Made by a program: the position numbers and the translations under genes
Source: Setoptus koraiensis
Lineage: Eukaryota > Animalia > Arthropoda
Assembly: GCA_048013815.1 (NCBI GenBank)
Contig: CM106586.1
Location: forward strand, 20,956,001 to 21,020,000
DNA: 64,000 nucleotides
Direction: 5' to 3'
Notes under the pieces: generated by a model
Told to the model about the DNA's origin: nothing
The model's database searches: none
Seen by the model: the letters and a program-made list of their open reading frames with translations, nothing else
Shown: positions 4,632-60,972 of the stretch, in pieces
Layout of the letters: each line of letters starts with the position of its first letter
Numbering within the stretch: position 1 is the first letter of the stretch

Positions 4632-6794
4632 ATGGCGACACAAGCGCTACCAGCAACAACAAATCATTATCTCAATAGGAGCGGTGATCAATTACAATGT
4701 CAACAGCAACGACAACAGCGGCGACACTGCCAGCCCGCAAAGCAACAATTGCAAGTCAATTGCAATTATGCCCGCTCACACAGCAGCAGCAGCAGTAATG
4801 AGGATAATTTGCATAAATTACGCACACGACGAAAGAGAGAGCGAAGAAAAGTGGAGCAAAACTGTTACGACGACCACAAAAATGATGACGATTTTCGCAC
4901 AAGCGGCGGCACCGCGCAAGCCCGGCCCGATTGCGCTGCAACCGGGCCGGTTCGGGTCCCGCACAACAACTGTGATCTCAGCCCCGCTGGCCGCCTGGCC
5001 AGTGCGGCAACTACCACCACTCCTATCACTCACACCACTCATACTACTGTCGACGTGATTGCAGCAACGTCGGTCAGACAGCAACCACAAGACAAACATA
5101 GTGAGCACACACAAAATTATAATTGTCACCTGTTCAGCAAGACGCCGTTGCTGTTGACGGTGATATGCCAATGTTTGTTGTTGTTTGTTGGCGCAACAAC
5201 AACAACAACGCACAGCCAACAGCACGCGCCCTCGTTGAAGCAAGTTGCGTCACAGTTGCGACACTTGTCACACTCGCCCACGCAAACGTTTGTGTCGACA
5301 GGAAACAGCCGGCAGCTGCTACCTGTTGTCAGCGGGACGGTGGTGAGCTCGTGGTCGGCCAACAAGCGCCAGCCAATGGCCATTGGTGCCAACAACAAAG
5401 GTGCCAGTGTCAACATAACGCACGTGACAGTGGACGAGCTAAACAGTGTCGTCTATGTGGGCGCCATCAATTGGATCATGCAATTCAATTTGGACAATTT
5501 GCAATTGGAGCGAGTGCTCAAAACGGGGCCCGTGATGGACAACGCTCGCGACTGCTCGCCGACCGACTGTGCGGCCACCATTCAGCTTGTGGACTCGTCC
5601 CTGCTCACTTCCGGCGCCGGCGCCGATCTCTCGCCACAAAACAACAACAACAACAACAACAACAATAATGTGATCAATCAAACGCGCAGCGCAATCAATG
5701 TCACAATCGACGCGAACAAACAAGCGACGCAAACCAGGCAAATGATGAGCAACAATTATAACAAGATACTAGTGATTGACTACGAGCAACAAAAACTAAT
5801 TGTGTGCGGCTCCGTGAATCAGGGCGCCTGTCGTCGCCACCAACTGGGTGATATTGGCAACTTTAGTGAGCTTATACCGCTGCCCGTGGCCGCCAACGAC
5901 GAGCACTCGTCCACAGTGGCCCTGGTCACCAGCAGCCAATCGCGAGTTGCGCCGCCAGCGGCCGGCTTGTTTGTGCAGCCCACTTCCGGTCAACAAGCGA
6001 AACTGTCGCATCACCTACAGCAGCAACAGCAGCAGCAGCTCCCGCAGCAACCGCAACAGCCGCCCGTCATGTATGTGGCCGCCACAAACACCCGCTTGGG
6101 TCCGTACCGCGACCTGGTGCCGGCCATCAGTTCGCGCTATCTCGACTCGCAGCGAGCCATGCAAATAGTGGACAAGTCGTTCACTGACACGGCGCGCGTG
6201 GACATTTCGCGCCACTTGCGTGATTATTTTCTAGTTAATTACATTTATTCCTTCCAAACTCAAGATTATGTTTATTTTGCCACCGTGCAACGCAAGTCCC
6301 ATTTGCGCTCGCTAGAGGAATGGGGCTACATAACGCGCCTAGTGAGAATTTGTCTCAACGACCCCAATCTGCAAACGTACACCGAAATGAGTTTGCAGTG
6401 CGTCGCCACCAACAGCAACCAGCCGCAACAGCAACAGCAACAACCGCAACAGCAGCAGCAGCAAGCGCGATTCTCAAGCTCACTCAAACAACAACAACAA
6501 GCAACGTCAGAGACCAACTACAATCTGCTGCAAGACGCTCACCTGGTGAACGCAAGCTCGCACTTGGCCCATCAGCTGGGCATCAGGCCCCAATCGGCCG
6601 TGCTGGTGGGCGCCTTTTCGCAGAGCAAGGATCACACGACCAAAAGTCAACACAAGAGCGCCATTTGTTTGTTTCCGCTGGACAAGATAGAGCAGAAATT
6701 CAACGAAAATATCCATCTATGTTACAATGGCAGCGTGTTGTCGCGCAACATCGACTACATCGCCGGAAGCGTCGACGAATGTCCCAAGCCCGGG
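4632..6794 (+). CDS. PlexB: Plexin-B-like receptor, coding exon 1 (N-terminal extension, signal-like segment, most of Sema domain)
   Basis: Plexin-B Sema motifs in ORF 4299-6812: PLPVAANDEHSST, RDLVPAISSR, RDYFLVNYIYSF, VQRKSH..GYITRLVRIC.NDP..TYTE, NENIHLCYNG. ATG in strong context (acaATGG) at 4632; another in-frame ATG at 4578. Phase-0 donor GTAAGT at 6795. Upstream exons cannot be excluded. Confidence 0.9.
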
Positions 6795-19270: not shown

Positions 19271-21221
19271 AAAGCGGGAAATATAGCCAATTTTTGTAAT
19301 GAGCCCATCAAGCTAAATGGTTCCGTTCCACTAATTACGTCGCCAGTGATTGTTTACGACAATGACCTAATAACGGCCATAACCTCAACTACGGCCACCA
19401 CCGCGCCCGTGGCCGCACCCACCAGCAACCCCGCCCATCAGCAGCAGCAGCACGCCGGCGGGCCGGCCCGAGCGGCTCAGCCGGACCGGACGCACCAGAT
19501 TCTGGTGGCGGGCACCCACGACGGACACATCAGGAAGATCGTGCTGACATCGGGCGAGCACAAGATGCGCCTACGCGGTCACGAGTTCGACTCTGTCCAA
19601 TTGGATCAGGAGCCCATTTTGGCCGATTTGGTTGTGGTGGCAAGCGGGGGCGCCGCCGCCAAGCAGCAAGCGGCTCCATCTGGCGCCGGCGGCGAGCAGT
19701 ACATTATCGCGGCCAGCGTTAACAAGTTGGCCAAGGTGCGACTCAATTCGTGCAAGCACTCGCCCCTGCAGCAGCAACCCGCAAGCGCCGCCAATCTGAC
19801 CGCCGCCGCCGGCAGCTCGCCGCCCCTCACCTGTGATCAGTGCGCCCAATTGCAGGACCCGTACTGCGGTTGGTGCTCACAATTAGCCGCGTGCACCGGC
19901 CGCCAGGAGTGCGCGCAACACCAGGAGCACCAGCAACAGCAGCAGCACCAGCCGCACCAACAGCAACGCACCGCCTGGCTGCCCTTCGACCAGATCCGGT
20001 GCGCCGACTACCGGCTGGTGAGCCAAAACTACGTGGCCCTGCAGCAGGACCAGCAGCTGACGCTGGACGTCAACATCAACAACCAAACGGGCGACGCGCA
20101 ACACTTTCCGCTGCCGCCGCTGTCGCTGCTGACCGCCACCCAGTTCACCTGTCACTACGATTACCCGCAGCAATTCCCGCAACCGCCGCAGCACCCGCAA
20201 CACCCGCAGCAGCAACAGCATCAACACCAGCAACAGCAGCAGGCCAGCTACACGGTGCGGGCGCACGCGGCGCGCCTCAACGCGCTCACCTCCACCGTCA
20301 CCATCGGGTGTCCGCTGCCGCCCGTCAGTCACCGGCCCGTGGGCAGGCCGCCAAGCGGTGCCGCGCACAACTATGACAGCGCCGACAGCGCAGTGGCGGA
20401 CAGTGTCAAGGTGAAACTGACGCTGCGCCACGTAGCGCCATACAACGGCAGCCTGGTGCGAGAGTTCAGATTTTACGACTGCTCGCAGCACTCCACCTGT
20501 CGGTCGTGCCTGCAGTCGGGCGCGCAAGTGTCGGGTTCCGGCGGCGGCGGCGGCGGCTGGACGTGCTGGTGGTGCCCGACGACGGGCCGCTGCACCCACA
20601 ATGTCACCAGCGCGCAATACGGCTGCCCGGCCGCGTTGCCCGCCGCTCAGCAGTGGCCCCTGAACCGGGCCCAGTCATTGAGCCAATGTCCGGCCGGCCA
20701 GCTGGACGGGCCGGCCGATTCGAGGCAGTCCGTGGCGCCGCTGGCGGCGCAGCAGCCGGCGCACGCGACCGCCAACCAGCGGCAAGCGGACCCGGCGAGC
20801 GCCTTGAGCAACCGCAACCAGAGTCACCAGCATCGCCAGCATCAGTTGCAGCAACAGATACAAGGGGCAAACAATCACAGTGTTGCGCAACAATTCAACA
20901 ACTACAACTACTACAACCAGTTGGCGGCCAACGCCGACCTGGCGCTCATTGCGCACATGATGCGCCGCACCCTGGTGATCAATCTCAAAAATAATCCGCT
21001 GCTGTTGCCCGCAACAGCCGGCAAACAGGCGCCCAACAACAACAAATTTGAATGTCTCGTGGAAATAGAGGGCGCCAAGGCGCGAATTGGGGCCAAATTG
21101 CTGGACAACCAACAGATCGTTTGCCAGGAGAACAGCTACACGTACGAGGACGAGGTGGCCACCATGCCGGCCAGCGTGTCGGTCATAATGAACGAGCACG
21201 CCACCATCGAGCGCACCGAGG
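19271..21221 (+). CDS. PlexB: Plexin-B-like exon 2 (end of Sema, PSI1, IPT1, PSI2, IPT2)
   Basis: Acceptor caacAG at 19269-70 joins CPKPG|KAGNIANFC in frame. PSI motifs CDQCAQLQDPYCGWCS and FYDCSQHSTCRSCL..CWWC. Phase-1 donor GTGAGT at 21222. Confidence 0.92.
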
Positions 21222-21344: not shown

Positions 21345-21520
21345 TGCTCCTGTACAAGTGTCAACTGTTTGGGGCCCAGCAGCGCAACAGGGCCGACTGC
21401 TCGCTGTGCGCCACCCTGGACAGGCGCTTCCAGTGCCAATGGTGCAACAATCAGTGCGCCCACGCCGACCAGTGCACCGAGCTGCCCTCGGTCAACTGTC
21501 CGCCGCCGCGGATCGACTCG
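21345..21520 (+). CDS. PlexB: Plexin-B-like exon 3 (PSI3)
   Basis: (V)LLYKCQLFG..DCSLCATLDRRFQCQWCNNQC..CPPPRIDS. Phase-1 acceptor cgccAG at 21343-44; phase-0 donor GTAAGT at 21521. Confidence 0.92.
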
Positions 21521-25096: not shown

Positions 25097-25242
25097 ATTT
25101 ATCCCTTGTCTGGGCCCGTGGAAGGAGGAACCATTGTGATAATAGAGGGCTCCAATTTGGGCTCCAACGAGCGCGAGATACACGATAAGGTGGCCATCGG
25201 CGGCATCCCGTGCACGCTCGTCGATTACAGCGTCTCTGTCAG
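25097..25242 (+). CDS. PlexB: Plexin-B-like exon 4 (IPT3, N-part); absent from the ORF track
   Basis: IYPLSGPVEGGTIVIIEGSNLG..IGGIPC is a canonical plexin IPT start. Acceptor ctttAG at 25095-96; phase-2 donor GTAAGA at 25243. Confidence 0.92.
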
Positions 25243-25577: not shown

Positions 25578-25683
25578 AATTGTGTGCCGCACCGGAGCCA
25601 GCCTGGTGGGGCCCCAGTCGGCGCTCGTGGTGGTCGGAAACCGGGCCGGCGTGGCCCGAGCGCAGGACAAGTTCCAGTACAAG
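25578..25683 (+). CDS. PlexB: Plexin-B-like exon 5 (IPT3, C-part)
   Basis: (R)IVCRTGASLVGPQSALVVVGNRAGVARAQDKFQYK. Phase-2 acceptor at 25576-77; phase-0 donor GTGAGC at 25684. Confidence 0.9.
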
Positions 25684-29300: not shown

Positions 29301-31114
29301 GCCGTGGCAGTGCGTGCCGATTTGTTGATTGTCCCACACAATGCGACACAATATGGCACGCTGCTGTCGTGTCCATGGGACAATGTCAACATCGACGGCT
29401 GCTGCAGCCACTAATTGAAATTGTGACAGTAGCTTGTGGCCAGACGGACAGTGTCATAATGCATGGCATCATCATTAACTGGCCGAGATTGTCGTTTGTG
29501 CGCGCTCTCACTGTCGTAATGACTGTCGTTGCGGCGTTGCGCGTCGTCATTTGGCCGACACGATTTTATCTCGGCGACAAATGCGACAAATGCCCGACCG
29601 GCTACCGCTTGCCCGCATACAAACGCCGCGCAAGATTCATCATCGGTCAAGAGTTGCCAGTCTCACTCAAGTGTGCCACGCTCAATAAACGACCGAATTC
29701 CAGATTGCCCAATTCGAGTTCTTCAGTCGCTGGAGTTTGGTGGCCGCGAATTGGCCGGCCGCAGTTGGCCGCCATTGGCCGCAGTTGGCCGCATCCGAAG
29801 CGCCGACTAGCAGCCAGTTGTAATTTGGCGAGTGACAATTAATTTATGTGACCCGCTGAATAATGTTGCCCGCTGCACTGGCCAATGGCGGCCTTATCTG
29901 GCGGGCATCTACTCGCTACTAGCAGGCTCATAATGATAAAGCAAACAAGCCACAAATCATTCCCTCGGCTACCATCGCTTCGGCCGCCGCTGCTCGTCGT
30001 CTGCGTCTCGGCTGACCTCTGGCCGTTCTCACGTATGCCTCGGGAATTCTCGCCATTCCCGACTCTCGACTCTCAATTCTCGACTCTCCATTTCTGCTCG
30101 CATCCCATGCCATGAATGTCGGGCCTTCTCGGCGCTCTCGACTCGCCGTGCTCAGCCGCTCCGCGCGGCCCGATCGCGAGTGGACGCGGATTCCCGGCCG
30201 CGCCGCAGAGTCCGCAGAGTCCGCAGAGTCCACTGAGTCCGCAGAGTCGGCCGGCCGGCGGCGCTCGCGTCGCTTGTGCCGCTGGTGACCAACGAGCGGC
30301 GCAAATTCTTGGCGCACTACAATAACCTGCAGCGGCGCGGTGTTGGCTCCATTAGTATGCGACCTCTGACAAGATTTATTGAGTCTGGATTAGATAATAA
30401 ATGGACTACTTGTTGTTGTTTGTCGCCCATTGCGAGGCTCGGTCGCCGGCGCAGCGATATGATCAGCGCTTCGGCGGCTCGGCGCTGCGGCGCTTGGCGC
30501 TTCGGCGGCTCGGCGATCGCCACTGTTGGCGCTGTTGCCAGCGGCTGCTTGGAGCGTCTTATTAGCGATAAATCTTGATTATCAGATTATAATGTGTTTG
30601 GCAGTTTTATTTCGCTCAATACCTGACAACTGCGCCGTGAGTGCGGCTACCTGAGCTGACGGCCTGACGAGCGGCCGACCAACACTCAATATGCGCCCTC
30701 CCGACGGCCGTTATTTGCCCTGATGACACATTACTCATTATTATCATTTTATTTTAATTTTGAATCCAATTCAAGCGCACTCACACAAATTGCACAACGC
30801 TGACATGACGCTGATATAGCGCTGATATTACGCTGATATAACGATATAGCGAAAAGTCAAATGCTCGAGAGGCTCGAGAGAGAAGCAACAATTTGTGTCC
30901 GATACACGGCATGCTTTAATGGCCCCGTCCAGTGACAGCTGCTGGACAATCGCTGTCAGCGGTGGCCGTGTGCCGGCCGACACAAAATCGGCGACGCATT
31001 TGATAAAATAAACACTGTACATATGATAAATGCTCGCAATAAATCATTGATGAATAACCAACTCTCCCACCGTTATTATTTTTCATCTTTACACACTCAC
31101 ACTCGCACTCACAG

Positions 31115-31251
31115 TCCATCCATTTGACCGATGTCAATCCAAAATTCGGACCCATGTCAGGTGGAACCCGGCTCTTTCTGACAGGCTCCAACTTGAACAT
31201 TGGCTCAAAGATCTCTATCTTCTTGGACGATGCGCCGTGCACGCTGGACAG
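31115..31251 (+). CDS. PlexB: Plexin-B-like exon 6 (IPT4, N-part); absent from the ORF track
   Basis: SIHLTDVNPKFGPMSGGTRLFLTGSNLNIGS..FLDDAPC. Acceptor cacAG at 31113-14; phase-2 donor GTAATA at 31252. Confidence 0.9.
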
Positions 31252-31385
31252 GTAATATATATAATATATCTGCGACATCTCGCTTCGCTCGCTTGCAGAA
31301 TTGGCGCTAACCTTTCTCCTTTCCATTGTCCTTTCCTTTGTCGTTGTACCCGCTAACGAACATATCAACGTATGTGTATATACAG

Positions 31386-33159
31386 GCTCGAGGCCAGCAG
31401 CAGGCAGATAAGCTGCATGACGCCCCAAAATACGGATATATCAACAAGTCGCGTTACGCGACTCACCTTGAACGTTGACAACTCCACTCACATCATACCG
31501 CACCCGTTTGTTTATCATTTGGATCCCGTTATAACCTCAATCAGTCCCATAGAGAGCTTTGTGTCGGGCGGCCGGCCGCTCATAATCACCGGGCATCATT
31601 TAAATGTGCCACAAACCGTTAAATTGTTGGTATATCACGAACACTATACAAACATATTCAATGGTAGCTATTGTATGGCAGAAAATGACACTTGGATTAT
31701 GTGTCTGACGCCGGCCATAAATAAGGAGATGCTCATGAGTGTCGGTGATACAACAACAACAACAACAAGTCAAACACGATCATTGATGCCAGTGGGCCAA
31801 GATCAGACAGCCAGCGCTCAAGATCAGCCCGCAGTGTCCGTTAACAATGTTAATCTTTTGAACGATATTCAATACGATAATGGCGGCCTGAGATTAAAAA
31901 TGTCAATTGTTATGGACGACGTGAGATCTGTTAGGCAATTAGATGAATATTATCCTCATTTGCCCCATTATATAACCTATTATGATGATCCGATAGTGTA
32001 CAAATTTCCCACAGAAATAGTCGTCTACAGTCCTGATGGGCTTGTGATAGAGGCCGATAATCTCAAGATGGCCTATCTCAAAGAGGACATAATAGTGACC
32101 ATTGGCATAAAACTTTGCACAATAACATCAATACGAGCCAATCAGATAGTGTGTACGCCGCCCCAGGAGCCCGTTCAACCGACCGACGACAAAGGTTATC
32201 CAACGGAGCGTCAATTGCCCCAAATTGTGGTCACCATTGGCTCAAACATTCGCCAAGAATTGGGATACATGCAATACGAGCCAAGTTTCTACAGTTCTAG
32301 CAGTCGCTCCGGCTCAGACATGACAAACGATTCGTTTTGGGCCGGGCCCCAAAAAGCTCTAATGGCCATTGTGGGTTTGTTTACATTTGGATTGGCCGTT
32401 GCAATGTTGTTTGTGGTGGCATTTTCGCGTTATCGCAACTCTAAGGCAGAAAAAGAATACAAACGTATCCAATTGCAAATGGGCTCATTGGACGTAAATG
32501 GCAACAATGGCGTGGGTGGCGGTGCCAATGGAGGACTTGTCCGTGGCGCAAATTGTGATCTAGACTATAGCAGCAGTGGTGGTCATCATAGCGGAGTGCC
32601 TAGCCTGTCGTCGCCAAGCAACAAAAAACTTCTCGCTTCTTATCCGTCGAGTCCGCTAACCAATTTCTCCACCATGTCCAGTGGCCCAGTTGCCAATGGC
32701 AATAGTGTCGCCAATCATACAATTCATCCTCATATTACTAAAATTAACGGATTGACCACCAAATATACAACAACCGTTCAGACGCCCTTAATAGGTAACT
32801 CGGGCTCTGAGCAGATTGTCTCAGGCCCAAATAGCTGGACATTTGACAATCTGTCCTCATCCAAGTCGTCGTCGGGCGGATCGCCCATGCAAAAGTCAAT
32901 AGAACGTCCACTAATATCCAACATGAACCATCATCATCAAATAGTCAATCACCACAATAATCTGGCTTCGGCCAACGACCATCAGCAGCACAACTATCAG
33001 ACAATTGAAAGGGATTCAATTTACAATTCAAGCCTCAATCGTCGTTACAATTGGCATTCCGATGCACCATCAACTATTGTGCCTTATGCCGTCATTGAGG
33101 CTTGCAATGTCGGCGATCGTCATAGCGAAGATAATAAGACAATGAGAAACTATGTATGA
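31386..33159 (+). CDS. PlexB: Plexin-B-like exon 7 (IPT4-6, TM helix, non-canonical cytoplasmic tail, stop)
   Basis: Phase-2 acceptor tacAG at 31384-85. ESFVSGGRPL IPT motif; TM ALMAIVGLFTFGLAVAMLFVVAF at ~32356-32424; juxtamembrane NSKAEKEYKRIQLQMGSLD. Then a low-complexity tail to TGA at 33157-59. Confidence 0.9.
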
Positions 33160-33271
33160 AAACATTCAACATTTAAACTTAAATTATTGTTATTTATATT
33201 TACTTATTGCTGTAGATATAACATTCTCAAACTGCCAACAGAGGATTTTCTCTAAAAAGTTAATTTTTCCA

Positions 33272-33277
33272 AATAAA
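33272..33277 (+). terminator. Candidate polyadenylation signal of the plexin transcript
   Basis: AATAAA ~113 nt after the stop, in an AT-rich stretch. Confidence 0.5.
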
Positions 33278-33501
33278 AAAGAAACGTTTCCGCTTCAGTT
33301 TGAAGCTGAAAAAATACACTTCCAGCAGTACGATGATGGCATCTATTCAATAGTAACAATCATTTAACTATTTATTTTACTTTGCTTTATCTCTGTTATC
33401 CAAGGCAGTGAAACTATTGAAGCAGGCAAATGTCTCTTCGATTAGGCGGAAATAGTAGAACAATTATAGAAATAATTTCAATCATGATTAATATGGCCAA
33501 G

Positions 33502-35130
33502 TCATAGTCCGCTGTAATTTCCAGACGACTCTTGCTGCTTTTCTTGGTGTCCCCTTGTCCTTCCTTGCAACCTGTTGCACCTTGGACAGCATTCTGGCCC
33601 TGTCAATGTAGCAAAACATTCAAGATGAAAGACTGTCTGACACTTGTGACATCGATACACTGAATCCGTATCGAATGGGTATATTATTTGTGGTGATTTG
33701 CATATTTCACATATGAAACCCTTTTGGCAACAAAGCATGCAATTGTGGACGTGACGCCGTCCAAAGGAAACTACACTCTTGAGTAGTTGTGCCAGGGCTC
33801 CCGATTTCACTTGTTCTAGATCCTCGAGTGAATACAGGTGTATGTGCTCAATTAGATGCTCACGGGGCCAGACTAATTTTGTCAACTCGAACGATATAGA
33901 GTCCTGAGTGCAAGTGAAACAATACGACCTTAAAAAGAAGGCCTGACTACGTAAATTCAATATTTCTCTCATTTCTACACAAACGGTGTATAGCAAAGGC
34001 GACATCATCTTGAGGTCGAAGATTGCCTCAGTGCTAATTAAATCCAGGAAATGTTGATTCCTTTTTGACACAGGATACTTTTTGAAGTCCCAGTTGCACA
34101 AAATTCTGGCCGGTATAATAGATTTTTCATCAAGATGACATTCTGTACAGTAGAGATGTCCATCGTACATGCAAAGTCGCGATTGACCAAACACCATACC
34201 TATTGGTCTACGACAGGAATAGCATTTGTATTCTTGTTCGTTATAGCCGTGTTCATTACCAATCTTTGGTAACTGTTGAAGGAATCGTTCTACCTCGGGA
34301 TCATTACTGTAAACATCCAAAATTGCACTCTTAGGAATAATCTCGTAGTCTGTTGGCCTTCGATTGACACGATTCACATACGGATGCAACCTTGTTGCAG
34401 CATGAATGTTGCTATCCAACGCATTAACATGTTTAAAACTATCAGCCGGATGTGTTTGTTGATTGGACGATGTGGTAGCATGATGCCGACAGTCAGTGTG
34501 GCGGTCGGCCGAGCTAAATGAAAGTTTTTCCTTTTGTCGATGACTTTGGCCAGAGTTTGGGGCAGCACAAACAGCCATTGTACCTCTCATTTCGGGAGTA
34601 CTTGAGAGTGCGGTGCCGGCGGTGGCGCTAGAATAATTCCAAAGGACCTTATCGTAGCTCTCCTCCTCGAGATGATCTTCTTTCAATAATAGTGACGATG
34701 ACAATGATGATTGAGGGTTTCGTGGGAAAGTTGCCTGGTCACTAGCGATTGAGGCGCTGGAAGATCGAGCGTTATTGTGAAGCAGCAATTCACTAAGTTC
34801 GTCCAACTTAGACGTGTCCGAGTTTGATGAGGAACGTTCCAGTTGAATCGATGCTGTTGCTGTTTTATCTACATTTATTTTTTGGTCTTGACTATTTGGT
34901 TTTATCACGTTGTAATTGGATGAACCACTAGTGGATGCGCTGCCCGATGCCGCAATACTGTGACTATCCGATGTTTTGTTATCACTTGGATGTTGTTGGT
35001 GCGTCTTGTTTCGACCAGATTCTTTAATTGACTTTTGTTGCAATCTAGACTCCTCTTCTATCAACTGCTGCACAACATCAATGGCCGGCATAACAGGGGC
35101 CAAGTTGAGTAAGTGATCATCGAAATGCAT
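33502..35130 (-). CDS. plekhm1: PLEKHM1/Rubicon/DEF8-family protein with C-terminal Rubicon-homology (RH, Rab7-binding zinc) domain, 542 aa, single exon
   Basis: RH signatures C..C.RPIG, LC.YDG.LYC..CH, IIPARIL.NWDF, WPREHL.EHIHLYSL.DL, HVHNC.LC.QKGFICEIC, CHKC..VFH..C, CPRC.R. The WPRE and IG-x-F segments look closer to PLEKHM1-type than to Rubicon (from memory). No RUN or PH domain in the ORF. Confidence 0.8.
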   Translation of the reverse strand: MHFDDHLLNLAPVMPAIDVVQQLIEEESRLQQKSIKESGRNKTHQQHPSDNKTSDSHSIAASGSASTSGSSNYNVIKPNSQDQKINVDKTATASIQLERSSSNSDTSKLDELSELLLHNNARSSSASIASDQATFPRNPQSSLSSSLLLKEDHLEEESYDKVLWNYSSATAGTALSSTPEMRGTMAVCAAPNSGQSHRQKEKLSFSSADRHTDCRHHATTSSNQQTHPADSFKHVNALDSNIHAATRLHPYVNRVNRRPTDYEIIPKSAILDVYSNDPEVERFLQQLPKIGNEHGYNEQEYKCYSCRRPIGMVFGQSRLCMYDGHLYCTECHLDEKSIIPARILCNWDFKKYPVSKRNQHFLDLISTEAIFDLKMMSPLLYTVCVEMREILNLRSQAFFLRSYCFTCTQDSISFELTKLVWPREHLIEHIHLYSLEDLEQVKSGALAQLLKSVVSFGRRHVHNCMLCCQKGFICEICKSPQIIYPFDTDSVYRCHKCQTVFHLECFATLTGPECCPRCNRLQGRTRGHQEKQQESSGNYSGL

Positions 35131-38100
35131 GATAATTATTCGCTTAAATTAGGCCCATTAGTTAATTATTAAATGGATTAATTGATCGATGTAAACAATT
35201 GACAAACAAGTGAAATAATTTCGTTGTTTTGTAGGATTGGATGCTGACACAAGAAAGATTTCAGGTGATCGAAGTTCATCACGACACAGGCGCGCACTTT
35301 GAATTTTTTTTTTCTTGTTTTTTTTTTCTTCTCATGTACTGAAAATCATAATGAATGATACATGTTTACAGTGTTTGGAATTGCTAGAGAGTGATAACTC
35401 GATGATGGCCGGAAGTCGTAGCTCTATTTATTATTCAACTTTACGATTATATTATTTACTAGAATATAATGAGTGATAGTATGGTATAAATGTGTTGTCG
35501 CTCAATAGTCTCTAAGTTGATAATAGTCAAGCTGCTGTTCAGCTGTGATGAAAACGAATCTTTGAATGCTTCGATTGTGGAATCCAGTCAAGGATTAACT
35601 CAGCCCCAAGCCATTTTGTTAGACCATCTTAAAATGTGATCTAAGGCCAATGTAATGAAATCATTGAGAGTGATCGTGGCTATGCAAATGAGCATTGTCA
35701 GTTGCACCAACAACACCAGCAGCAGCTCTGGCAAAGTCAATATCATTCCATCATAGTAGTGTAAGACACAAATCACCATGCACATCATATCAAAAATCAA
35801 CCATCAATTACCGATCAATTAGTCATCTGTCTGACAAGCAGCAAGCGAACAGTGCATCATCAAGATAATAATTGTGCAAAAGAAAAAGCCAAAATAATGC
35901 TTATCGCAATAATAATCGACACTGTAGCCATCTCACCATCTCTATCTTAATCAGTCTGCTGGGGTTTGTGTTATCTAATAACATGTTACATAACAGTAAC
36001 AAATTATAACATCCATGAAACTGATATAATGTTGACCATTCCTCAACAGTTTCGCTATTTTAAACCATTCGTTGTTTTGGTCTCCCACTCGCCAAGAGCT
36101 TCGTGAAAAAATCTCATCTGATGTATCGTGATGGTCCAGACGAAGGTCTCTGGCGCTTTTTAGGCAATTTTTTCACCTCCCTAGCAACTTCTTAAATTAT
36201 ACGCGTTATCTTTACGGACGTGTTTTCCTCCATGAGATGTTCTTCATTCTTATCAATAAGTTGGACACACACAATATCCTTTATACTTTCTATTATGTTC
36301 TCATCAAGTTCAAACTCATTCAATTAGGCAATTAAGCAGAATTGGCTTCACTCACAAGCAACTGATAGTTTATATCAGCGTTCAGATGCCATAGCGAAGA
36401 GTTTATGCATGGGTAAACCATACTAAGTAGATTATTGAGACTTTCTTTATCTTCTTAGTTCACTTGGGCATGCATCACGAAGGCGAAGATTGGCCAGTTG
36501 GTATCGTTGCCAGCACCAACTGACCTACAATTGGCTCTGTGATTTAATAAACAGGCCACAATTAATTTCATTCGCATGGTTGTGCGAGCAGGTGAAGAGT
36601 ATCAGAGCTCATAGTCTCCAAAAACAAATGTTGGGTATGTCAGAGAAGGTTTCTTTCACTGATATAGTTGTGTTGGTAGTAGAGCTTGGAGCCAGTTATG
36701 AGTCTCATGTTTATGCAGCCTATCTCGGTCTGGCGAGATAAAAAGTTTCGTTTTTTTTTTTGAACTTGAAACTTACTTTTGGAATTAGAGAAATTGTTGT
36801 TTGCATCAGATCTGTATTGGAATCAATCCTAGATGAATTGTTAATTGCACCGGCTACAGCTCAGTGTTGTCGCGTATGCTAGCCATGGTGTGTTTAATGA
36901 TCGTGGACCTTCATTACAATGATACTTGTTTTCGGTGGCAGCAAGTCAACTCTGCGCTAGTTGCAACATCAAAACTAATTAGCCATTGCACCAACCGGCA
37001 AGCCTTTGACTAGTCTAATCCGAACGCAAACAAGTATTGTGTGTAGAGTCAAGTTTGCCTCTCTCTCTCTTTCTCTCTCTGAATGCCTGTCTGCCAACTG
37101 ATCAAACGACTGCCATATTTTTGTCTAGACGCAAATCCAATAAATATATTGTACAACAGTGCAAACGAGACAAATACTTCATTGCTTCAGTCTGTGATCG
37201 AAGAGTTTAACGTGTGATGAATTTTGCATCAAGATTTTGCAATTTTTGTTTCTTTTCAACACCAGCCACTGGTACAGCCCGCTCACATCCCGCTTGGTAT
37301 TATATCACACCTTTAGAGATCACCATGATATGAGCAAAATTTATATTTGGCCGTGATGTAAGAGAATGTCTCATTATCTCATTATATCTCATTTATACAC
37401 ATTCACATCATTAAGCCATAATCATGACTCTTTACTCAATATTTGTTCCTCATAACACAGAAATGATTTTTGTCTCATTTAACTATCTCCACTGTTTGAC
37501 AAAGTAGAAACCAGCTTCCGCAAAGAGAACCTGTTGTCGCTGTTGTTGTTGTTGCTGTCGCTGTTATTGCTGTCGCTGTTGTTTTCGTTGTTGTTGTTAT
37601 TGCCATGGATGTTATTTACTTCGAAGAGAAATTAATGGAAGTTTCAGCTGGATTACGTGATACCTGTAATTGTGTGAACAGTGCTTGCTCGTATGATGCA
37701 ACGACAATCTAAGCTTCTTACGACTTCTCCGATGCATTTGCTAGTATCTCTTACATTATCTTCATCTTGATTTTTGTATTTAGATATGGAGAATTACAGA
37801 AGGAAAGAAAAGAATCTGAATGAATCGGCAACAGGTTGCAAAGTGTAAACAACAACATTTGTTCTGAGAATATTTGCTGAGAGAATTCGCTTGTCAAGGG
37901 CTGAACTTGAAACTCAGAATTGTGTGACGATCCTCAATGATCAGATGCAACCAGCTACTGAACGAAAACAAATCTTCAAGCGACACATTTGCAGAATTGA
38001 TTTATTGCGTGATGATCTACTAGAGTTAGATTACAATTGCGTCGAGTAAGTCACCGTTCAATTAACGTCGATCAAGCATATACATACATATTTTCTTTTT

Positions 38101-38225
38101 GTCATTTTGATGTCATCAACAGTTTCACAAACAGCTCATCTCATCTCAGCTCACCTCAATTCAATTAGTTGCAAGATCAGTAAGACAGCTCAGTGAAGCG
38201 TCGCTATCAGTTATCAACACTCACA

Positions 38226-38955
38226 ATGTTTGAAGTGTCAAGGTGTAAAGTGGCTTATTTGTTGACTGTCGTCACTGTAGCCACTATATTGGTACTTAAT
38301 AATGGTTCATGGGCTTCGGCATCGCCAGCATCAAGAGGCGACGCTGGACTCACAGCGGATAATAATAAGAATCTAGCTTCGTTTGCAAAAAGAAACGACA
38401 ACTCTGATCTGTTGGCTGTTGCGTCCACTGGATCTCTGGCGTCGGCGTCAGCGTCGGCCGCGGCATTGGCATCGTCGTCATCTCAACTGGATGACAAAGA
38501 TTTAGACGACTTACAAGACAAACGAGACATAGTGTCAAGTCAAAAGAGGCCACCAATTGTCGATGATGATCGTGCAAGTTCGTCGAGGCGCGACAGAGAG
38601 CGTGCCAGCGCCATAGATCGAGCGGCTGACATTGGCAGCAAAAAAGATGAGGCGCGCGACGAGGCGGATTATGACGACGAACAGCGAGATCAACGACACC
38701 CGATCAGGGCCCACAGGGGCAGAGATCGAAGCAGACATAGAGGCAGAAACAGTGGAAATAATCGACGATACGACGAAGAAGACAACGAGGAGCCGGCGAC
38801 GAGCCTCGATAGATATTGTCGGCGTCATCCGAACAGTCGACGTTGCAGCGACGACGACGACGACGACGATAGCGAACGTCATAGATTGAGCACGTTCGGT
38901 TCACTGTTCGAGCCCATGTTTGACATGATGAGGAGAATGCCCATCGATCCGTCAG
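38226..38955 (+). CDS. Secreted highly charged orphan protein, exon 1
   Basis: ATG at 38226. Hydrophobic signal peptide VAYLLTVVTVATILVL..ASA. D/E/R/H-rich body with KR/RR sites. Phase-1 donor GTGAGA at 38956. Confidence 0.75.
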
Positions 38956-39057
38956 GTGAGAAACTGACCAACAAGCTAACAACTAACTTGTAAGTGGCGC
39001 ACTTGTTGCTGTTTGTTTAACTTGTATTAATATTGTTTGTTCTGGTCTATATATTAG

Positions 39058-39218
39058 GTGTCTCGGCCTCATCGAGCGTATCATCGTCGGACAGCGACGG
39101 CCTGAGTCGATCAAGTGGCACATTCATACACAATGGCCGATTGAGGGGATTCTTTTCGGAAACAGGCCGAGATGGCAGGACCAGAACCAAGTACATAGGC
39201 GACGACGAGGACAATTGA
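39058..39218 (+). CDS. Secreted highly charged orphan protein, exon 2 (total 296 aa)
   Basis: Pyrimidine-rich acceptor tattAG at 39056-57, phase-compatible (PSG|VSASSS). Stop TGA at 39216-18; AATAAA at 39422. Confidence 0.7.
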
Positions 39219-40470
39219 CGCGGCCCGGTCGCACTGTTTGACCACTCTATTTATGGTTGATGGTCTTGCCGGCAGAGGGCCACAGCTTTGTGGCACAACA
39301 ACAGAATTAAAGTTACATAATAACAAACAAATCATTGTCAATGCATCAGTCATTGCATGTGTTGTCTGACACAGAGTGAGTTGGTGGACAATGTGTCAGC
39401 TGTAATCCGGGCAGAGAAAAGAATAAAAGTATGACTCACGCCGGACTCAAGCCAACAAATGCGTTGGCAGGTAAGCTGTCAGCGGCGAGCAAGTTTTATC
39501 TGGTGGCAACCGCAATCAGTGTTCTCATGCGACAAGTTTGTTTATACAAGTCTCTCCGAGTGTCTGTGTCGCCCGCAACCTGTGACTCACAAGTGTGTCG
39601 TTTGTCCAATGTTATGACTGCCAGAATAACTGGCTAGACCAGCCAGCTATAGTTAGCTGTAACTGGCTGGCAAGCAAGGATATTTTCACAAGTATTCAAG
39701 GGGTATTTTCGAGGTTAAACAGTGTTGCTGTTGCAAATTCGTAACGATTTGACAAATCGGATTTGTGGCACAATCGCCAACATGAGCGTTGGTGCAGAGG
39801 TGCGCCCCCCTGCGCAGAGCAAAGCGCGAATTTGAAACGGCTCAACATCCGCCGTTCGGCCTCAGAATTTCGGTCACAAATGGCGACTGTGCGCAGCGAC
39901 GCGGCCCCCGCCATCAGCCTGCCTGTACCAATACTCATGTCGGCACCACTTGAGCTGGCTAGATGTAGGGGTTGCGGTGGGAATTTGACGCCATTGTAAT
40001 AACAATTTTACGCCTAAATGCGAAACGCCGTCTGTTGATATTGGCATTGAATCGAATCTCGGATAACACGACAACAGCAACAACAACAACAACTAGACAG
40101 ATTGTGCGCCAACCTATTGCATTGATGCGTACAATTGCACCGGACAAGCGCGCTAAATTGATGCAATAGTGGCACAAGATTGCATCGGCTGGCTGCTCGG
40201 CGTTGCCTTACACAAACTGTACAATTGCAACTACAGTAAACAGTTTACAATACAAATTGCGTGTGCGTGAGTGTGCCAAATGACAAATTGAACACTGCGC
40301 CGTTCGTGCGTCAATCAATCATTAACAGTTACACTTGTGTGTGTGTGTCATTGTGCTCACTGTTAGGCACAAACGACCGCAAACGACTGTGTGTGCGCTG
40401 CGCAAGCCGTCTCAAGACTATTTGTGCTCTTGAGATGATGACAATCACATCGTCATCACATTGATAAATG

Positions 40471-40486
40471 TTGTTATCGATAACAA
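40471..40486. promoter_or_regulatory. 16-bp perfect palindrome with DRE core (TATCGATA), upstream of the C2-protein gene
   Basis: TTGTTATCGATAACAA is its own reverse complement. TCAGT (Inr-like) at 40556 and TATAAA at 40576 precede ATG 40633. Confidence 0.45.
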
Positions 40487-40632
40487 GCCAACGAGATAAA
40501 TAACATCCACTCCACTTAAATCATCTTATATCATCGCTACGTTATACTCCAGTTATCAGTATTTTCTAACATTATTATAAATATTATCGCCGACACGCCA
40601 ACATCTAAAAATATTACTATTATTAAATTATA

Positions 40633-40829
40633 ATGAGTGCAAAACTGTCTTCAAAAATGGCCCGCGTCGCACTTACGCTCATGCTGGCGGCCACCATATT
40701 TGTCCAGCAACTCCAAGGGGCCCCCCTCAACGACACACTGGACCTCAAAATTGACGGCAAGGCCGAGTGCGTCCGACACACCGGCTGGTCGCCCGACCAA
40801 ATTGAACTGTCCACCGTTTACAACGACGG
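40633..40829 (+). CDS. Secreted Cys-module + C2-domain protein, exon 1 (signal peptide)
   Basis: MSAKLSSKMARVALTLMLAATIFVQQLQGA is a signal peptide. Phase-2 donor GTAAGT at 40830. Confidence 0.8.
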
Positions 40830-41009
40830 GTAAGTCTCATATCGTATCATGACCTATCTGGCTACTAACAATCACAATCTCACCATAATTACCGATAATC
40901 ACAATATCCGACTCCGCTCTCTGTTTTTCCCTCGTTTCACCATCATAACTAATCGCAACCATCTACTCACTATCATAATCATCTAATCACAATCGTCTGA
41001 TCGACACAG

Positions 41010-41577
41010 TTGCGCCGTTGTGTGTATTGTGAAGGGAAAATCAGACGTGGACACCTCGTTTAACATCCGACACAACCTGCCTTGTTACGATCTCGAGCAC
41101 ATCTGCTACGACGGCAGCTGCTACGAGAAGGGACACCAACCCAAAACTAGTGCACACGACAAAAAGGTCTATGCCACCATCAAAATCTATGGTGCCTCCG
41201 TCAGAGATGCCGATCCTTGGCCACTGCAGGGACTCTCCGATCCGTTTGCCGTTGTAGAGGAGCTCACCAGTACCGGCAGCAATCTGTTTTGTCACACTAA
41301 AACTATTCAAGACACCAACACACCCAAATGGAGCCACACTTGCAAAAGTAACCCGCTGCACATGAAATCGAGGCTTCGATTCTCTGTTTATGACTCGGAC
41401 AAACCCGCCGAGAAACCAGACAAATTGGGCTCGGCCAATGTAACCCTAGAGGATATCGCCGATGGCGAACCGCACGCTCTGTCGTTGAGCGGATCTCATG
41501 GAGCCGGAACAACGGGGGCCTTCATAAAGGTATCTATAAACATTACAAGTGATTACAAAATCGGCACCGAGCTTTAA
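41010..41577 (+). CDS. Secreted Cys-module + C2-domain protein, exon 2 (total 254 aa)
   Basis: Phase-2 acceptor cacAG at 41008-09 (NDG|CAVVC). C2 motifs DADP..SDPFAVV, TKTIQDTNTPKW, LRFSVYDSD..DKLG. Stop TAA; AATAAA at 41643. Confidence 0.85.
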
Positions 41578-41922
41578 GTCATTACAAGCCACACACATTA
41601 TTACATTGCTCCGCGGCTGAATATGAGTATTAGTTGATGTATAATAAAGATTACGTCGTTTATAATGTTGGCCCCGATGAGGCCCACCGCTTTATTGCCG
41701 TTGTTCAAATTTCGAGATCACATGCTAAAGACATTTTGTTGTGAGTTCGATTCTTATTATTTCGATTGTTGTCAAGACGACCGCCAATTGGCCTGGACCA
41801 TCTGTAGTTGACGCCGGAGATCGGCTGCCATCCGAATTGGGCCTCGCTAGCTATTGTTGGCCGCGGCTGACTTATATATTGGTATGTATACTGGTGGTGC
41901 TCAACGGAATGTGTTGTTGCTA

Positions 41923-42697
41923 TCAATATCTTTGACAAGTTTGTTTCATTACAAGCGGATCAAATGGGACCGACGAACTGCCAGGTGAAGAGAAATTGGA
42001 ATTCGATGATATTGGCGATGTTTGTTGATGATACTGTTGCTGCTGATGATGATTACAATTACCAGGCATACCAGTTGTTGGCCTGAATTGCGTTATTGTT
42101 ACGTCCATTCGTTGAATTTGTTGTTCTGATCCACCGTTCGTCAAATTTTGTTGTTGATGTTGTTGTGGTTGTATGGGCATATATTGATTGATTGAATGTT
42201 GTTGATGTTGTTGTTGGCGAATATGATGAGACTGATGATGATTATGATGGTGATGATGGTGGTGATGATTTTGATAATGCTGGTGCCCATGCGATAATGT
42301 ATTATTAGCAGCTGCATTAATTGTACAGCAACTATCTAGACCGTCTGCGACCATTTGTTGTGACCCATTCAACAAGGACGAATTATCATTCATTGATAGT
42401 TTCAATTTGGGTTGTAATTGGGCCCCTCTACCTGTGTGATGATCACAATTATTGTGGATATCCATAATTACAGAATGGCGGCCACTATCGAGACTATCGT
42501 TGTTGTCGTTTATATGCATTAATTTAGAGTTACTATTGCGATTACATGCTTGATTAATAGCGGCGCCATTGTTAGTAGTGGCCATGAGATGGGTCATCGA
42601 TTTGTCGTCCATTATACTGTTACTATTATTATTATTGTTATTATCAATATCTAAGGCTGCTTTCGATAAAATGTCACCCTTGTGGGATCGATGGTGC

Positions 42698-42728
<31 letters not shown>

Positions 42729-42887
42729 CAGCAGTTTTGTTTACATGAGTCAGACGATGCAGGGCGCCGTGCTGATGATGCTGGTGGTGATGGTTGTTGC
42801 TCTTTTGGTGCACCTTCATATGCCTAGTTATCATATCCTTTCGGCAAGCGGTATAAATGCAGAGCTTGCACTTGTATGGCTTCTCGC
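41923..42887 (-). CDS. klu: klumpfuss, last exon (third finger + H/Q/N-rich tail)
   Basis: (G)EKPYKCKLCIYTACRKDMITRHMKVH matches the diagnostic last Klu finger (PYAACRRDMITRHMRTH type). Phase-1 acceptor at 42888-89 on the minus strand. Confidence 0.9.
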
Positions 42888-43073
42888 CTGATTGTGGATC
42901 GGGCAAACGAATCAAACGAGAGGGAATAAAGAGAATAAAAAATGAGTTATTTTGCCATTCAATTCACTTGTCGACAATTTTTGGGGCCCTTGACCCGCGA
43001 CGGAGCTTTGGGGCCATTGTGCGGCAACAAAACGGAGCAACAGAACGGAATATCAACGACAAATTCAGCTTAC

Positions 43074-60851: not shown

Positions 60852-60972
60852 GTGAGTAGACCTGGCATAGGTTTCTCTTTGCCAACAAATTGATTGACAG
60901 TTTGTATTGATGGCACAAATACTGATATCTGTTTTTTACCACTTTCGCCCATCTCTAATCACACCAATGTAG

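What the first reader, a model, noticed from the sequence alone, without database searches (positions are those of the whole stretch)
32356..33277. Plexin-B with an intact ectodomain but no RasGAP/RBD: a candidate decoy or rewired semaphorin receptor
Seen: Sema, three PSI and the IPT repeats, the TM helix and the juxtamembrane start NSKAEKEYKRIQLQMGSLD (plexin-B: KSTQAEREYKRIQIQM.LE) are all present. Homology then stops, and ~221 aa of S/N/G/H-rich sequence run to ..EDNKTMRNYV*. AATAAA follows at 33272, and a convergent gene stops only ~340 nt away. No GAP-like ORF appears anywhere in the window. Established: plexins signal through a ~600-aa split RasGAP with an inserted Rho-binding domain, and this is the family's defining module. 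Inference: this receptor could still bind Sema-2-type ligands yet act as a dominant-negative, ligand sink or co-receptor, or signal through a new Tyr/Ser-rich tail with a hydrophobic C-terminus (possible PDZ ligand).
Basis: partly seen in the sequence, partly recalled or inferred. Interest (0 to 1): 0.85.

Follow-up and report, generated by a model that had tools for sequence, protein, structure and literature searches.

The report
GAP-less plexin-B paralogue in mites
This is a real, expressed and strongly conserved extra copy of the axon-guidance receptor plexin-B, apparently from a gall or rust mite, that keeps the whole outer part but has swapped the family's enzymatic inner part for a short disordered tail with its own invariant end motif, which makes it a natural test of what a plexin can do without its GAP domain.

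Summary
A seven-exon gene (about 5.1-33.2 kb, + strand) encodes Sema, PSI and IPT domains, a TM helix and the plexin juxtamembrane helix. Homology to plexins ends at 32493, and 221 further codons run to a stop at 33157.

No RasGAP or RBD coding sequence lies in the window, nor beside the orthologous exon in four other assemblies.

The tail is coding sequence, not a read-through intron:
- Its dN/dS against a 90%-identical relative is 0.07, with dS about 1.
- 31 of 31 orthologous tails keep PY[AS][VL]IEAC, and 30 of 31 end in [YF][VLI].
- RNA contigs cross two upstream splice junctions and the stop codon.

The organism looks like an eriophyoid mite (inference). The gene is a separate paralogue. 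Canonical GAP+RBD plexin-B sits on other contigs of the same assemblies in two related species, and 13 such sequences turned up in the clade.

The tail is predicted disordered and matches no known domain. It has no profile similarity to the GAP domain.

I read it as a non-catalytic semaphorin-binding receptor whose tail carries docking or sorting motifs. That makes it more than a passive decoy, but the function is untested.

The precedents are sponge short-tail plexins and truncated plexin-B1 isoforms, so this is a new variant of a known kind.

I had not seen the scan note this gene elsewhere.

The parts
5148..6794 (+). Exon 1 (3' part): a hydrophobic signal-like segment, then the first two thirds of the Sema domain. 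The start codon is not resolved. In-frame ATGs lie at 4578 and 4632, or an upstream exon may exist.
   Evidence: tblastn to plexin-B proteins covers 5304-6839. Pfam Sema hit. Donor GGG|GTAAGT lies after 6794. The spliced model stays open from 4299.
19271..21221 (+). Exon 2: end of the Sema domain, PSI1, IPT1, PSI2 and IPT2 (TIG_2), with Q-rich inserts.
   Evidence: A 700-aa open frame. tblastn hits. Pfam PSI and TIG_2. Acceptor CAG| and donor G|GTGAGT keep the frame.
21345..21520 (+). Exon 3: PSI3 (plexin-B type).
   Evidence: Pfam PSI_Plexin-B, E 1e-4, below Pfam's gathering score (22.4 against 27 bits). Splice sites read. The model is in frame.
25097..25242 (+). Exon 4: start of IPT3.
   Evidence: 67% identity to Leptotrombidium plexin-B-like. 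Pfam TIG. Splice sites read.
25578..25683 (+). Exon 5: rest of IPT3, ending ...ARAQDKFQYK.
   Evidence: tblastn hit. The loose 5' end of an RNA contig from run X5 matches 25652-25681 exactly and joins to 31113/31115.
31115..31251 (+). Exon 6: start of IPT4.
   Evidence: A run X5 contig is spliced on both sides. The joint 31247>31382 is GT..AG with the cut 4 nt to the right, so the intron is 31252-31385. Pfam TIG.
31386..33159 (+). Exon 7 (last coding exon): IPT4-6, TM helix, juxtamembrane helix, new tail and stop codon.
   Evidence: ORF. Pfam TIG. Orthologous exon ORFs are found in 30 other sequences. RNA contigs cover 31574-31814, 32055-32271 and 32973-33236 in run X5, and 33027-33270 in run X1.
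32356..32424 (+). Transmembrane helix ALMAIVGLFTFGLAVAMLFVVAF.
   Evidence: Read directly from the sequence. It sits at the position of the TM helix of aligned plexins.
32443..32493 (+). Juxtamembrane helix KAEKEYKRIQLQMGSLD. This is the last stretch homologous to plexins.
   Evidence: tblastn homology ends at 32493. It is the only confident helix in the AlphaFold model (residues 4-15). YK[RI]IQLQ occurs in 31/31 orthologues.
32494..33156 (+). New 221-aa cytoplasmic tail. It is predicted disordered and carries conserved short motifs: CDLDY at 32554-32568, SSPLTNFS at 32647-32670 and ITKINGL at 32734-32754.
   Evidence: dN/dS is 0.07 at dS 1.0 against L001. Alignment A1. Mean pLDDT 46. No Pfam hit, no credible PDB hit, no GAP-profile hit.
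33049..33108 (+). Invariant C-terminal block NWHSDAPSTIVPYAVIEACN (family consensus NWTQEAPSTIVPYAVIEACN).
   Evidence: PY[AS][VL]IEAC occurs in 31/31 orthologues and W..[ED]AP[ST]T in 30/31.
33142..33159 (+). C-terminus MRNYV plus the stop codon. The family ends in [KR]-x-[YF]-[VLI]-COOH.
   Evidence: 30/31 orthologues end in [YF][VLI]. A run X5 RNA contig reads through the stop into the 3' UTR.
33272..33277 (+). AATAAA poly(A) signal of the plexin gene.
   Evidence: Read from the sequence. RNA contigs end at 33236 and 33270, and RNA coverage is absent until 33520.
33502..35130 (-). Convergent neighbouring gene with a Rubicon-homology domain (DEF8-like). It is not part of the plexin gene but bounds it.
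   Evidence: Pfam RH_dom, E 7e-64. The same neighbour lies 117 nt after the stop in the close relative L001.

Best explanation
Shown:
- This is a dedicated, intact, transcribed gene for a membrane plexin of the B type.
- It has the full Sema-PSI-IPT ectodomain, one TM helix and the plexin juxtamembrane helix.
- It has no RasGAP or Rho-binding domain. In their place is a 205-467-aa tail (221 aa here), predicted disordered, under strong purifying selection.
- The tail ends in an invariant block W-x-x-[ED]-A-P-[ST]-T-[IV]-[VL]-[PS]-Y-[AS]-[VL]-I-E-A-C and a [YF]-[VLI] C-terminus.
- It is a paralogue that coexists with a canonical GAP+RBD plexin-B in the same clade.

Inferred:
- The clade is Eriophyoidea.
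- The ectodomain still binds the clade's plexin-B ligands (Sema-2-type) or pairs with canonical plexin-B.
- The protein cannot switch off Rap. Its output must therefore come from the tail's linear motifs.
- The central Tyr motif fits both YxxPhi (AP-2 sorting) and the ITIM pattern [ILV]xYxx[ILV]. There is also a conserved S-P-x-T site and a C-terminal aromatic-aliphatic pair.
- I therefore read it as a non-catalytic semaphorin receptor. It would either internalise and clear ligand or recruit adaptors, and so tune or diversify canonical plexin-B signalling. I do not read it as an inert decoy.
For: Architecture and loss of GAP:
- Pfam and tblastn results.
- A single uninterrupted seven-exon ORF.

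The tail is coding and constrained:
- dN/dS is 0.07 for the tail and 0.098 for the IPT part, at dS 0.7-1.0.
- 24 tail homologues were found.
- Motif counts reach 31/31 and 30/31, and the motifs are laid out in alignment A1.

The tail is disordered and new:
- Mean pLDDT is 46, with only the juxtamembrane helix confident.
- There is no Pfam hit, no credible PDB hit and no profile match to the GAP domain.

The gene ends here in several species:
- In L001 an RH_dom gene follows on the opposite strand.
- In L002, L003 and L004 and on the P0010 contig, a TAF1-like gene follows on the same strand about 0.8 kb downstream.
- No GAP hit appears in any of these loci at E<=1.

Expression and splicing: run X5 holds spliced contigs and a contig across the stop codon.

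It is a paralogue, not the only PlexB:
- Canonical P0029 and tail-type P0010 both come from SRR29131048.
- Canonical P0341 (NODE_179, coverage 610) and tail-type P0272 (NODE_271, coverage 605) both come from ERZ761561.
- 13 canonical GAP+RBD sequences were found in the clade (P0029 and 12 relatives).
- In the tree the tail-type clade has 100/100 support and is separate from P0029.

Function without a cytoplasmic domain has precedent: Drosophila PlexA lacking its cytoplasmic domain still supports medulla layering, acting as a ligand (bioRxiv 10.1101/2023.08.07.552282).
Against: - No binding, localisation or phosphorylation data exist. The motif assignments (YxxPhi, ITIM-like, S-P site, C-terminal signal) are pattern matches to definitions I recalled from memory, not tests.
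- RNA evidence is thin. Depth is 2-10x in Logan contigs, and the middle of the tail (32410-32847) has no RNA coverage.
- The canonical PlexB of this very genome was not seen by me. It rests on unchecked scan notes.
- The start codon and signal peptide are unresolved.
- Conservation of the Sema-domain ligand surface was not examined.
- The taxon call rests on one gene (CROT-like ORF, 55% to Aceria tosichella).
Confidence: 0.6

Rival explanations
1. Passive decoy or dominant-negative. The ectodomain soaks up semaphorin or forms dead heterodimers with canonical plexin-B, and the tail has no specific role beyond anchoring.
For: - The GAP and RBD are completely absent.
- Canonical PlexB coexists with it, so there is something to antagonise.
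- Truncated human plexin-B1 forms have been proposed as decoys (PMC1838422 abstract).
Against: - A tail with no role should drift. Instead its dN/dS is 0.07.
- An 18-residue block is invariant in 31/31 sequences, across lineages whose ectodomains are only about 40% identical.
Confidence: 0.2
2. Dedicated ligand for reverse signalling. The ectodomain is presented to transmembrane semaphorins on neighbouring cells, as PlexA is to Sema-1a. The tail then only controls where and how long it is displayed.
For: - PlexA without its cytoplasmic domain still carries out its ligand function in Drosophila (bioRxiv 10.1101/2023.08.07.552282).
- The ectodomain here is intact, and its IPT part is constrained (dN/dS 0.098).
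Against: - The gene groups with B-type plexins. From my own knowledge, the known insect ligands of B-type plexins are secreted Sema-2 proteins, and reverse signalling is documented for PlexA/Sema-1a.
- No data on mite semaphorins were collected here.
Confidence: 0.15
3. Artefact of gene structure. The real transcript splices from near 32494 to GAP exons that are far away, unassembled or on another scaffold, and the tail is a retained intron or a minor isoform.
For: - A GT follows GSLD at 32494.
- RNA coverage of the mid-tail is nil in the runs available.
Against: - The GT is a Val codon, absent in most orthologues, which have Ile or Ala there.
- The tail is under purifying selection, and the stop position is conserved in 30/31 sequences.
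- No GAP sequence lies 31 kb downstream here or about 10 kb downstream in three other assemblies, where unrelated genes follow directly.
- Canonical PlexB sits on different contigs.
- Contigs span the region without a break.
Confidence: 0.03
4. Decaying duplicate: a pseudogene left over from a plexin-B duplication.
For: Loss of the family's catalytic module is what a dying copy might show.
Against: - The seven-exon ORF of about 2,000 codons is uninterrupted.
- dN/dS is 0.07-0.10.
- Orthologues exist in about 30 sequences, with a deep split inside the clade.
- Spliced RNA is present.
Confidence: 0.01

Closest known systems
Canonical arthropod plexin-B (e.g. Limulus XP_022239400, Anopheles nili XP_053671423; Drosophila PlexB)
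   Same: - Sema-PSI-IPT ectodomain, TM helix and juxtamembrane EREYKRIQ(L/I)QM helix.
- 30-42% identity over the ectodomain.
- Groups with chelicerate B-type plexins in the tree.
   Different: - No Plexin_cytopl RasGAP and no Plexin_RBD.
- A new disordered tail with its own invariant C-terminal block.
- It is a separate paralogue next to a canonical PlexB in the same genomes.
Sponge short-tail plexins (Amphimedon queenslandica Plexin-A1 to -A4; Junqueira Alves et al. 2019, PMC6374515)
   Same: [quoted passage not shown]
   Different: - Independent origin. The mite clade is nested among chelicerate B-type plexins.
- Here the tail itself is conserved across about 30 sequences and carries an invariant motif.
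- I found no such case reported in Bilateria. A search for plexin plus eriophy* found no paper.
Truncated or short isoforms of human plexin-B1, proposed as decoys (PMC1838422)
   Same: Plexin-B ectodomain without the cytoplasmic signalling domain.
   Different: - Those are products of a gene that also makes the full receptor, and are partly secreted.
- This is a stand-alone gene that always keeps its TM helix and has a selected cytoplasmic tail.
Drosophila PlexA acting as a ligand independently of its cytoplasmic domain (bioRxiv 10.1101/2023.08.07.552282)
   Same: Shows that a plexin ectodomain on a membrane anchor is functional without GAP activity.
   Different: That is an engineered truncation of an A-type plexin, not a natural GAP-less gene, and it has no conserved replacement tail.
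Met / RON and Met-like RTKs with a plexin ectodomain (PMC6374515)
   Same: The plexin-type ectodomain is recombined with a different cytoplasmic part.
   Different: Those carry a tyrosine kinase domain. Here no domain of any kind is detected.

Membership tests
Plexin family (class B) | N-terminal Sema domain | tested here: met
   Pfam Sema on exon 1, E 2e-6. tblastn gives 32-42% identity to plexin-B Sema domains, E down to 1e-105.
Plexin family (class B) | Array of PSI and IPT/TIG domains between the Sema domain and the membrane | tested here: met
   Pfam PSI, TIG_2, PSI_Plexin-B (E 1e-4, below its gathering score) and TIG on five exon pieces. Colinear tblastn with full-length plexins.
Plexin family (class B) | Single TM helix followed by the conserved juxtamembrane helix (EREYKRIQ.QM) | tested here: met
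   A 23-residue hydrophobic stretch lies at 32356-32424 and KAEKEYKRIQLQM at 32443-32481. A helix is predicted at pLDDT of about 76.
Plexin family (class B) | Cytoplasmic split RasGAP domain (Pfam Plexin_cytopl, PF08337) | tested here: not met
   No Pfam hit on the tail. tblastn of two GAP domains against the window gives only noise, and against L001-L005 nothing at E<=1. hhalign of tail profile against GAP profile gives probability 0.1%.
Plexin family (class B) | Rho-GTPase-binding domain inserted in the GAP (Pfam Plexin_RBD, PF20170) | tested here: not met
   Absent from the tail and from the window. It is present in the clade's canonical PlexB.
Plexin family (class B) | Phylogenetic position among B-type rather than A-type plexins | tested here: met
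   In the tree of the IPT4-TM region, the clade sits in a 20-row group with Limulus and Leptotrombidium plexin-B (96/94). Insect PlexA is in the other half. Branches are long, so support is moderate.
Met / Met-like receptor tyrosine kinases | Cytoplasmic tyrosine kinase domain | tested here: not met
   No Pfam domain in the tail. No credible PDB match. Predicted disordered.
Splice-truncated plexin isoforms | The short form is made from a locus that also encodes the GAP-bearing form | tested here: not met
   No GAP exons lie downstream in any of the five assemblies examined (this window and L001-L004). Canonical PlexB is on separate contigs.
Semaphorin receptor (functional class) | Binds a semaphorin through the Sema domain | not testable with these tools

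The most novel reading that the evidence does not exclude
The invariant tail block (…APSTIVPYAVIEAC…, then [YF][VLI]-COOH) is a new signalling or sorting module. It would give a plexin ectodomain a GAP-independent output. One route is Tyr-phosphorylation-dependent recruitment of an SH2 phosphatase or adaptor. Another is AP-2-driven scavenging of semaphorin. Either way, this mite clade would run two parallel plexin-B pathways from one ligand family.
Probability: 0.3. Interest if true: 0.7.

Novelty: new variant of a known kind. Interest (0 to 1): 0.58.

Why it matters
Plexins are defined by their Rap-GAP domain. Whether their ectodomains have GAP-independent roles is mostly studied with engineered truncations.

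Here evolution has done the experiment. A whole mite clade has kept, under strong constraint, a plexin-B copy that lost the GAP and RBD and gained a different conserved tail, beside an ordinary plexin-B.

If the tail is a docking or sorting signal, it points to a second way of reading semaphorin cues. If the protein is a modulator, it is a natural, membrane-anchored regulator of plexin-B signalling.

It also shows that the loss seen in sponges has recurred inside Bilateria. In addition, it flags a gene family that is missing from annotated protein sets.

Tried and rejected
- Intron read-through after GSLD|GT. Rejected: the GT is a Val codon not shared by orthologues, and the tail is selected.
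- Tail as a degenerate GAP domain. Rejected: the profile-profile comparison is null.
- Tail as a known domain. Pfam gave nothing. A PDB profile search gave only two chance-level hits to a deacetylase (E 0.05). AlphaFold predicts disorder.
- P0013, a 467-aa ORF with a Tyr-rich tail, as an older member of the family. Rejected: it groups with Leptotrombidium plexin-B and keeps the first GAP-side residues (NAMVNMECRQ) before a GT, so it is probably an ordinary exon read into its intron.
- P0016, P0151 and P0021 ('plexin-B-like', 1142-1676 aa) as GAP-less relatives. Rejected: the first two carry Plexin_cytopl, and the third is a poor model ending in repeat junk.
- JGI metagenome scan for GAP domains, meant to find the canonical gene in the metagenome that holds L002. 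Inconclusive: only the best 80 of 434 hits were returned, and none came from that sample.
- Findings look-up by GAP sequence: blank.
- Sample matching for P0014, P0017, P0052 and P0342: no overlap with samples holding the tail type, so uninformative.
- Literature search for plexin plus eriophy*: no paper.
Full report
**What is there**

The stretch 32356-33277 is the 3' end of a large + strand gene. Reading the DNA and the ORF list shows one open frame from 31372 to the stop at 33157-33159. It contains:
- IPT repeats;
- a 23-residue hydrophobic helix (ALMAIVGLFTFGLAVAMLFVVAF, 32356-32424);
- the plexin juxtamembrane sequence KAEKEYKRIQLQMGSLD (32443-32493);
- 221 further residues rich in S, N, G and H, ending ...EDNKTMRNYV.

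AATAAA is at 33272-33277. A convergent ORF stops at 33502-33504 and carries a Rubicon-homology domain (Pfam RH_dom, E 7e-64).

**Gene model**

tblastn with full-length plexins (Limulus, Anopheles, Penaeus, Leptotrombidium, Trichinella, Gordionus) maps colinear exons at about 5.3-6.8, 19.3-21.2, 21.3-21.5, 25.1-25.2, 25.6-25.7, 31.1-31.25 and 31.4-32.5 kb. In every case homology stops at 32493.

Reading the splice sites gives seven exons:
- E1: ..-6794
- E2: 19271-21221
- E3: 21345-21520
- E4: 25097-25242
- E5: 25578-25683
- E6: 31115-31251
- E7: 31386-33159

Joined, they form one frame with no internal stop, about 1,980 codons from a signal-like hydrophobic segment at about 5148. Pfam finds Sema, PSI, TIG_2, PSI_Plexin-B (E 1e-4, below its gathering score) and TIG on the exon pieces. 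The start codon is not resolved.

**No GAP domain**

- Pfam finds nothing on the 221-aa tail.
- tblastn of the Limulus and Anopheles GAP+RBD regions against the whole window gives only noise at E<=10, with a best E of 0.7 inside GC-rich introns.
- A profile of the tail does not match a profile of 12 plexin GAP domains (hhalign probability 0.1%).
- A PDB profile search gives only chance-level hits.
- AlphaFold with the family alignment predicts disorder. Mean pLDDT is 46, and only the juxtamembrane helix is confident.

**Is the tail real coding sequence?**

A full-library phmmer search with the last-exon ORF found one 90%-identical protein (P0001) that covers the entire tail. It also found about a dozen 38-49%-identical ORFs of 455-903 aa that end the same way. 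A word-indexed search scored on the tail alone found 24 proteins, all unnamed, from Logan, ENA and JGI assemblies.

Against L001, the contig encoding P0001, Nei-Gojobori estimates are:

| Region | dN | dS | dN/dS |
|---|---|---|---|
| Tail (218 codons) | 0.071 | 1.01 | 0.07 |
| IPT part | 0.071 | 0.72 | 0.098 |
| TM and juxtamembrane part | 0.009 | 0.67 | 0.014 |

So the tail is as constrained as the ectodomain.

The alignment (A1) shows islands of conservation in otherwise free-drifting, length-variable sequence (205-467 aa):
- EREYKRIQLQMGSLD(I/V)NGQP
- RALDY
- SFPPSPLTDISSL (SYPSSPLTNFS here)
- VKLxxNG
- an SSQSSPGSS stretch
- a C-terminal block

Across 31 sequences, PY[AS][VL]IEAC occurs in 31, W..[ED]AP[ST]T in 30, and a terminal [YF][VLI] in 30.

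The GT after GSLD in this window is simply the Val codon. Most orthologues have Ile there, so there is no conserved donor.

**Does the gene end here?**

- In the close relative (L001), the same RH_dom gene lies 117 nt after the stop on the other strand.
- In three other assemblies (L002 and L003, L004, and the P0010 contig), a TAF1-like gene (DUF3591 plus bromodomain) follows on the same strand about 0.8 kb downstream.
- None of these loci has GAP-like sequence at E<=1.
- Different neighbours, the same stop and the same C-terminus mean the tail is the true end of the protein.

**Assembly and expression**

- One 5.1-kb contig of run X2 covers 30950-35300 without a difference. It may be this genome's own source.
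- Run X3 is DNA, since its contigs run unspliced through the introns. Its contigs tile the region, and one spans 32929-33748.
- Run X5 is RNA. One contig joins 25681|31113 and 31247|31382 (GT..AG with the cut shifted by 4). Its loose 5' end matches 25652-25681 exactly.
- Other X5 contigs cover 31574-31814, 32055-32271 and 32973-33236, which runs through the stop into the 3' UTR.
- Run X1 (labelled RNA?) covers 33027-33270.
- RNA coverage is absent from 33271 to 33519, as expected for two convergent 3' ends.
- Depth is low, and 32410-32847 has no RNA contig. Expression is therefore shown, but the full-length mRNA is not.

**Whose genome, and is this the only plexin-B?**

A carnitine octanoyltransferase-like ORF in the window (59280-60890) has about 35 unnamed relatives at 55-61% identity. 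Its best named relative is Aceria tosichella at 55%, followed by trombidiform and oribatid mites at 41-45%. No annotated protein in the 1.8-billion-protein library contains this exon. The genome has two chromosome-scale pieces of about 50 Mb in total. Together these suggest an eriophyoid mite. That is an inference.

The GAP-bearing ORF P0029 (1674 aa, with TIG, Plexin_cytopl and Plexin_RBD) comes from the same run, SRR29131048, as the tail-type P0010. Searching with its cytoplasmic part finds 12 further unnamed orthologues at 41-48% identity and 88-100% coverage. After those come named arthropod plexin-B proteins.

One of these orthologues, P0341, lies on NODE_179 (coverage 610) of ENA assembly ERZ761561. 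The tail-type P0272 lies on NODE_271 (coverage 605) of the same assembly.

So in at least two species both genes sit in one genome.

A maximum-likelihood tree of the IPT4-TM region shows:
- the 12 tail-type sequences form one clade (100/100) on a long stem;
- that clade lies inside a group with Limulus and Leptotrombidium plexin-B;
- it is separate from P0029;
- this window plus P0001 is sister to all the other tail-type sequences, so the type is ancestral to the sampled clade.

For this genome itself I could not search outside the window. Three scan notes report Plexin-B exons on the other chromosome, which I did not check.

**How it probably works**

Shown:
- an intact, selected ectodomain on a membrane anchor;
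- no Rap-GAP and no RBD;
- a selected disordered tail with invariant short motifs;
- a canonical plexin-B present alongside it.

Inferred:
- The protein still engages plexin-B ligands or plexin-B itself, and it acts without GAP chemistry.
- The central motif (I/V)(V/L)P-Y-A-V-I fits two established patterns that I recall from memory. One is YxxPhi, for AP-2-mediated endocytosis. The other is the ITIM pattern [ILV]xYxx[ILV], for SH2 phosphatases.
- A conserved S-P-x-T looks like a proline-directed kinase site.
- The terminal [KR]-x-[YF]-[VLI] could be a PDZ ligand or an ER-export signal.

The tail's constraint argues against an inert decoy. I favour a non-catalytic receptor that clears ligand or recruits adaptors and so tunes plexin-B signalling. 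A pure decoy and a ligand for reverse signalling are the live rivals. The Drosophila PlexA cytoplasmic-deletion allele shows that a GAP-less plexin can be functional.

**Comparison with what is known**

- It fails two defining plexin features, the RasGAP and the RBD, so it is plexin-derived rather than a full plexin.
- It is not a Met-type kinase.
- The nearest architectural precedents are four Amphimedon plexins with short intracellular parts and no conserved domains (PMC6374515), and truncated human plexin-B1 forms proposed as decoys (PMC1838422).
- It differs from these in three ways: an independent origin inside chelicerate B-type plexins, a stand-alone gene, and a tail that is itself conserved.
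- A search for plexin plus eriophy* found no paper.
- I rate it a new variant of a known kind. It is of moderate to good interest to people working on semaphorin signalling and of limited surprise otherwise.

Noticed in passing
window 1-31000 versus 32000-44000: The plexin gene's long introns (6.8-19.3, 21.5-25.1 and 25.7-31.1 kb) and its upstream region are 52-63% GC and full of simple repeats (GT/CA runs, poly-Q-like frames). The last exon and the downstream genes are 39-48% GC. Introns richer in GC than exons are unusual, and large introns are unexpected in what looks like a small mite genome.
   Followed up: partly
window 33502-35130 (-); L001 1971-3527; L002 12404-16069; L004 3454-7164: The gene after the plexin stop differs between lineages. 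Here and in the 90%-identical relative it is a convergent Rubicon-homology (DEF8-like) gene. In three other assemblies it is a same-strand TAF1-like gene. There is therefore a synteny break right at the 3' end of the gene.
   Followed up: partly
window 31111-31167 and 33068-33105 (run X2 records 3 and 4): Two short low-depth contigs (about 3x, against 136x for the main contig) match only 57 and 38 bases of plexin exons, each with 4 mismatches, and are flanked by unrelated sequence. The second lies in the invariant C-terminal block. They could come from a second related species in the sample, or from dispersed copies of plexin exon pieces like those mentioned in scan notes s1-367040 and s1-367077.
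   Followed up: no
P0029 (contig of SRR29131048), P0052 (L088 670-4998): The clade's canonical plexin-B ORFs carry inserts of 100-200 aa or more, Q/S/N-rich and of low complexity, inside the RasGAP domain. In P0029 the Limulus-aligned blocks are 226-823, 959-1200 and 1408-1667. It is an open question whether the GAP still folds and works.
   Followed up: no
L087 56-1459 (P0013): An exon ORF that groups with Leptotrombidium plexin-B-like stays open for about 130 Tyr-rich codons after ...NAMVNMECRQ|GT. This is probably intron read-through, but the length of the open frame is odd.
   Followed up: partly
window 41926-47541 (-), 55483-56763 (+), 59280-60890 (+): Other genes seen in the six-frame listing: a C2H2 zinc-finger ORF directly followed by a 1525-aa ORF on the minus strand, an HSF-like DNA-binding ORF, and a carnitine octanoyltransferase-like ORF. 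The last was used here for the taxon call.
   Followed up: partly
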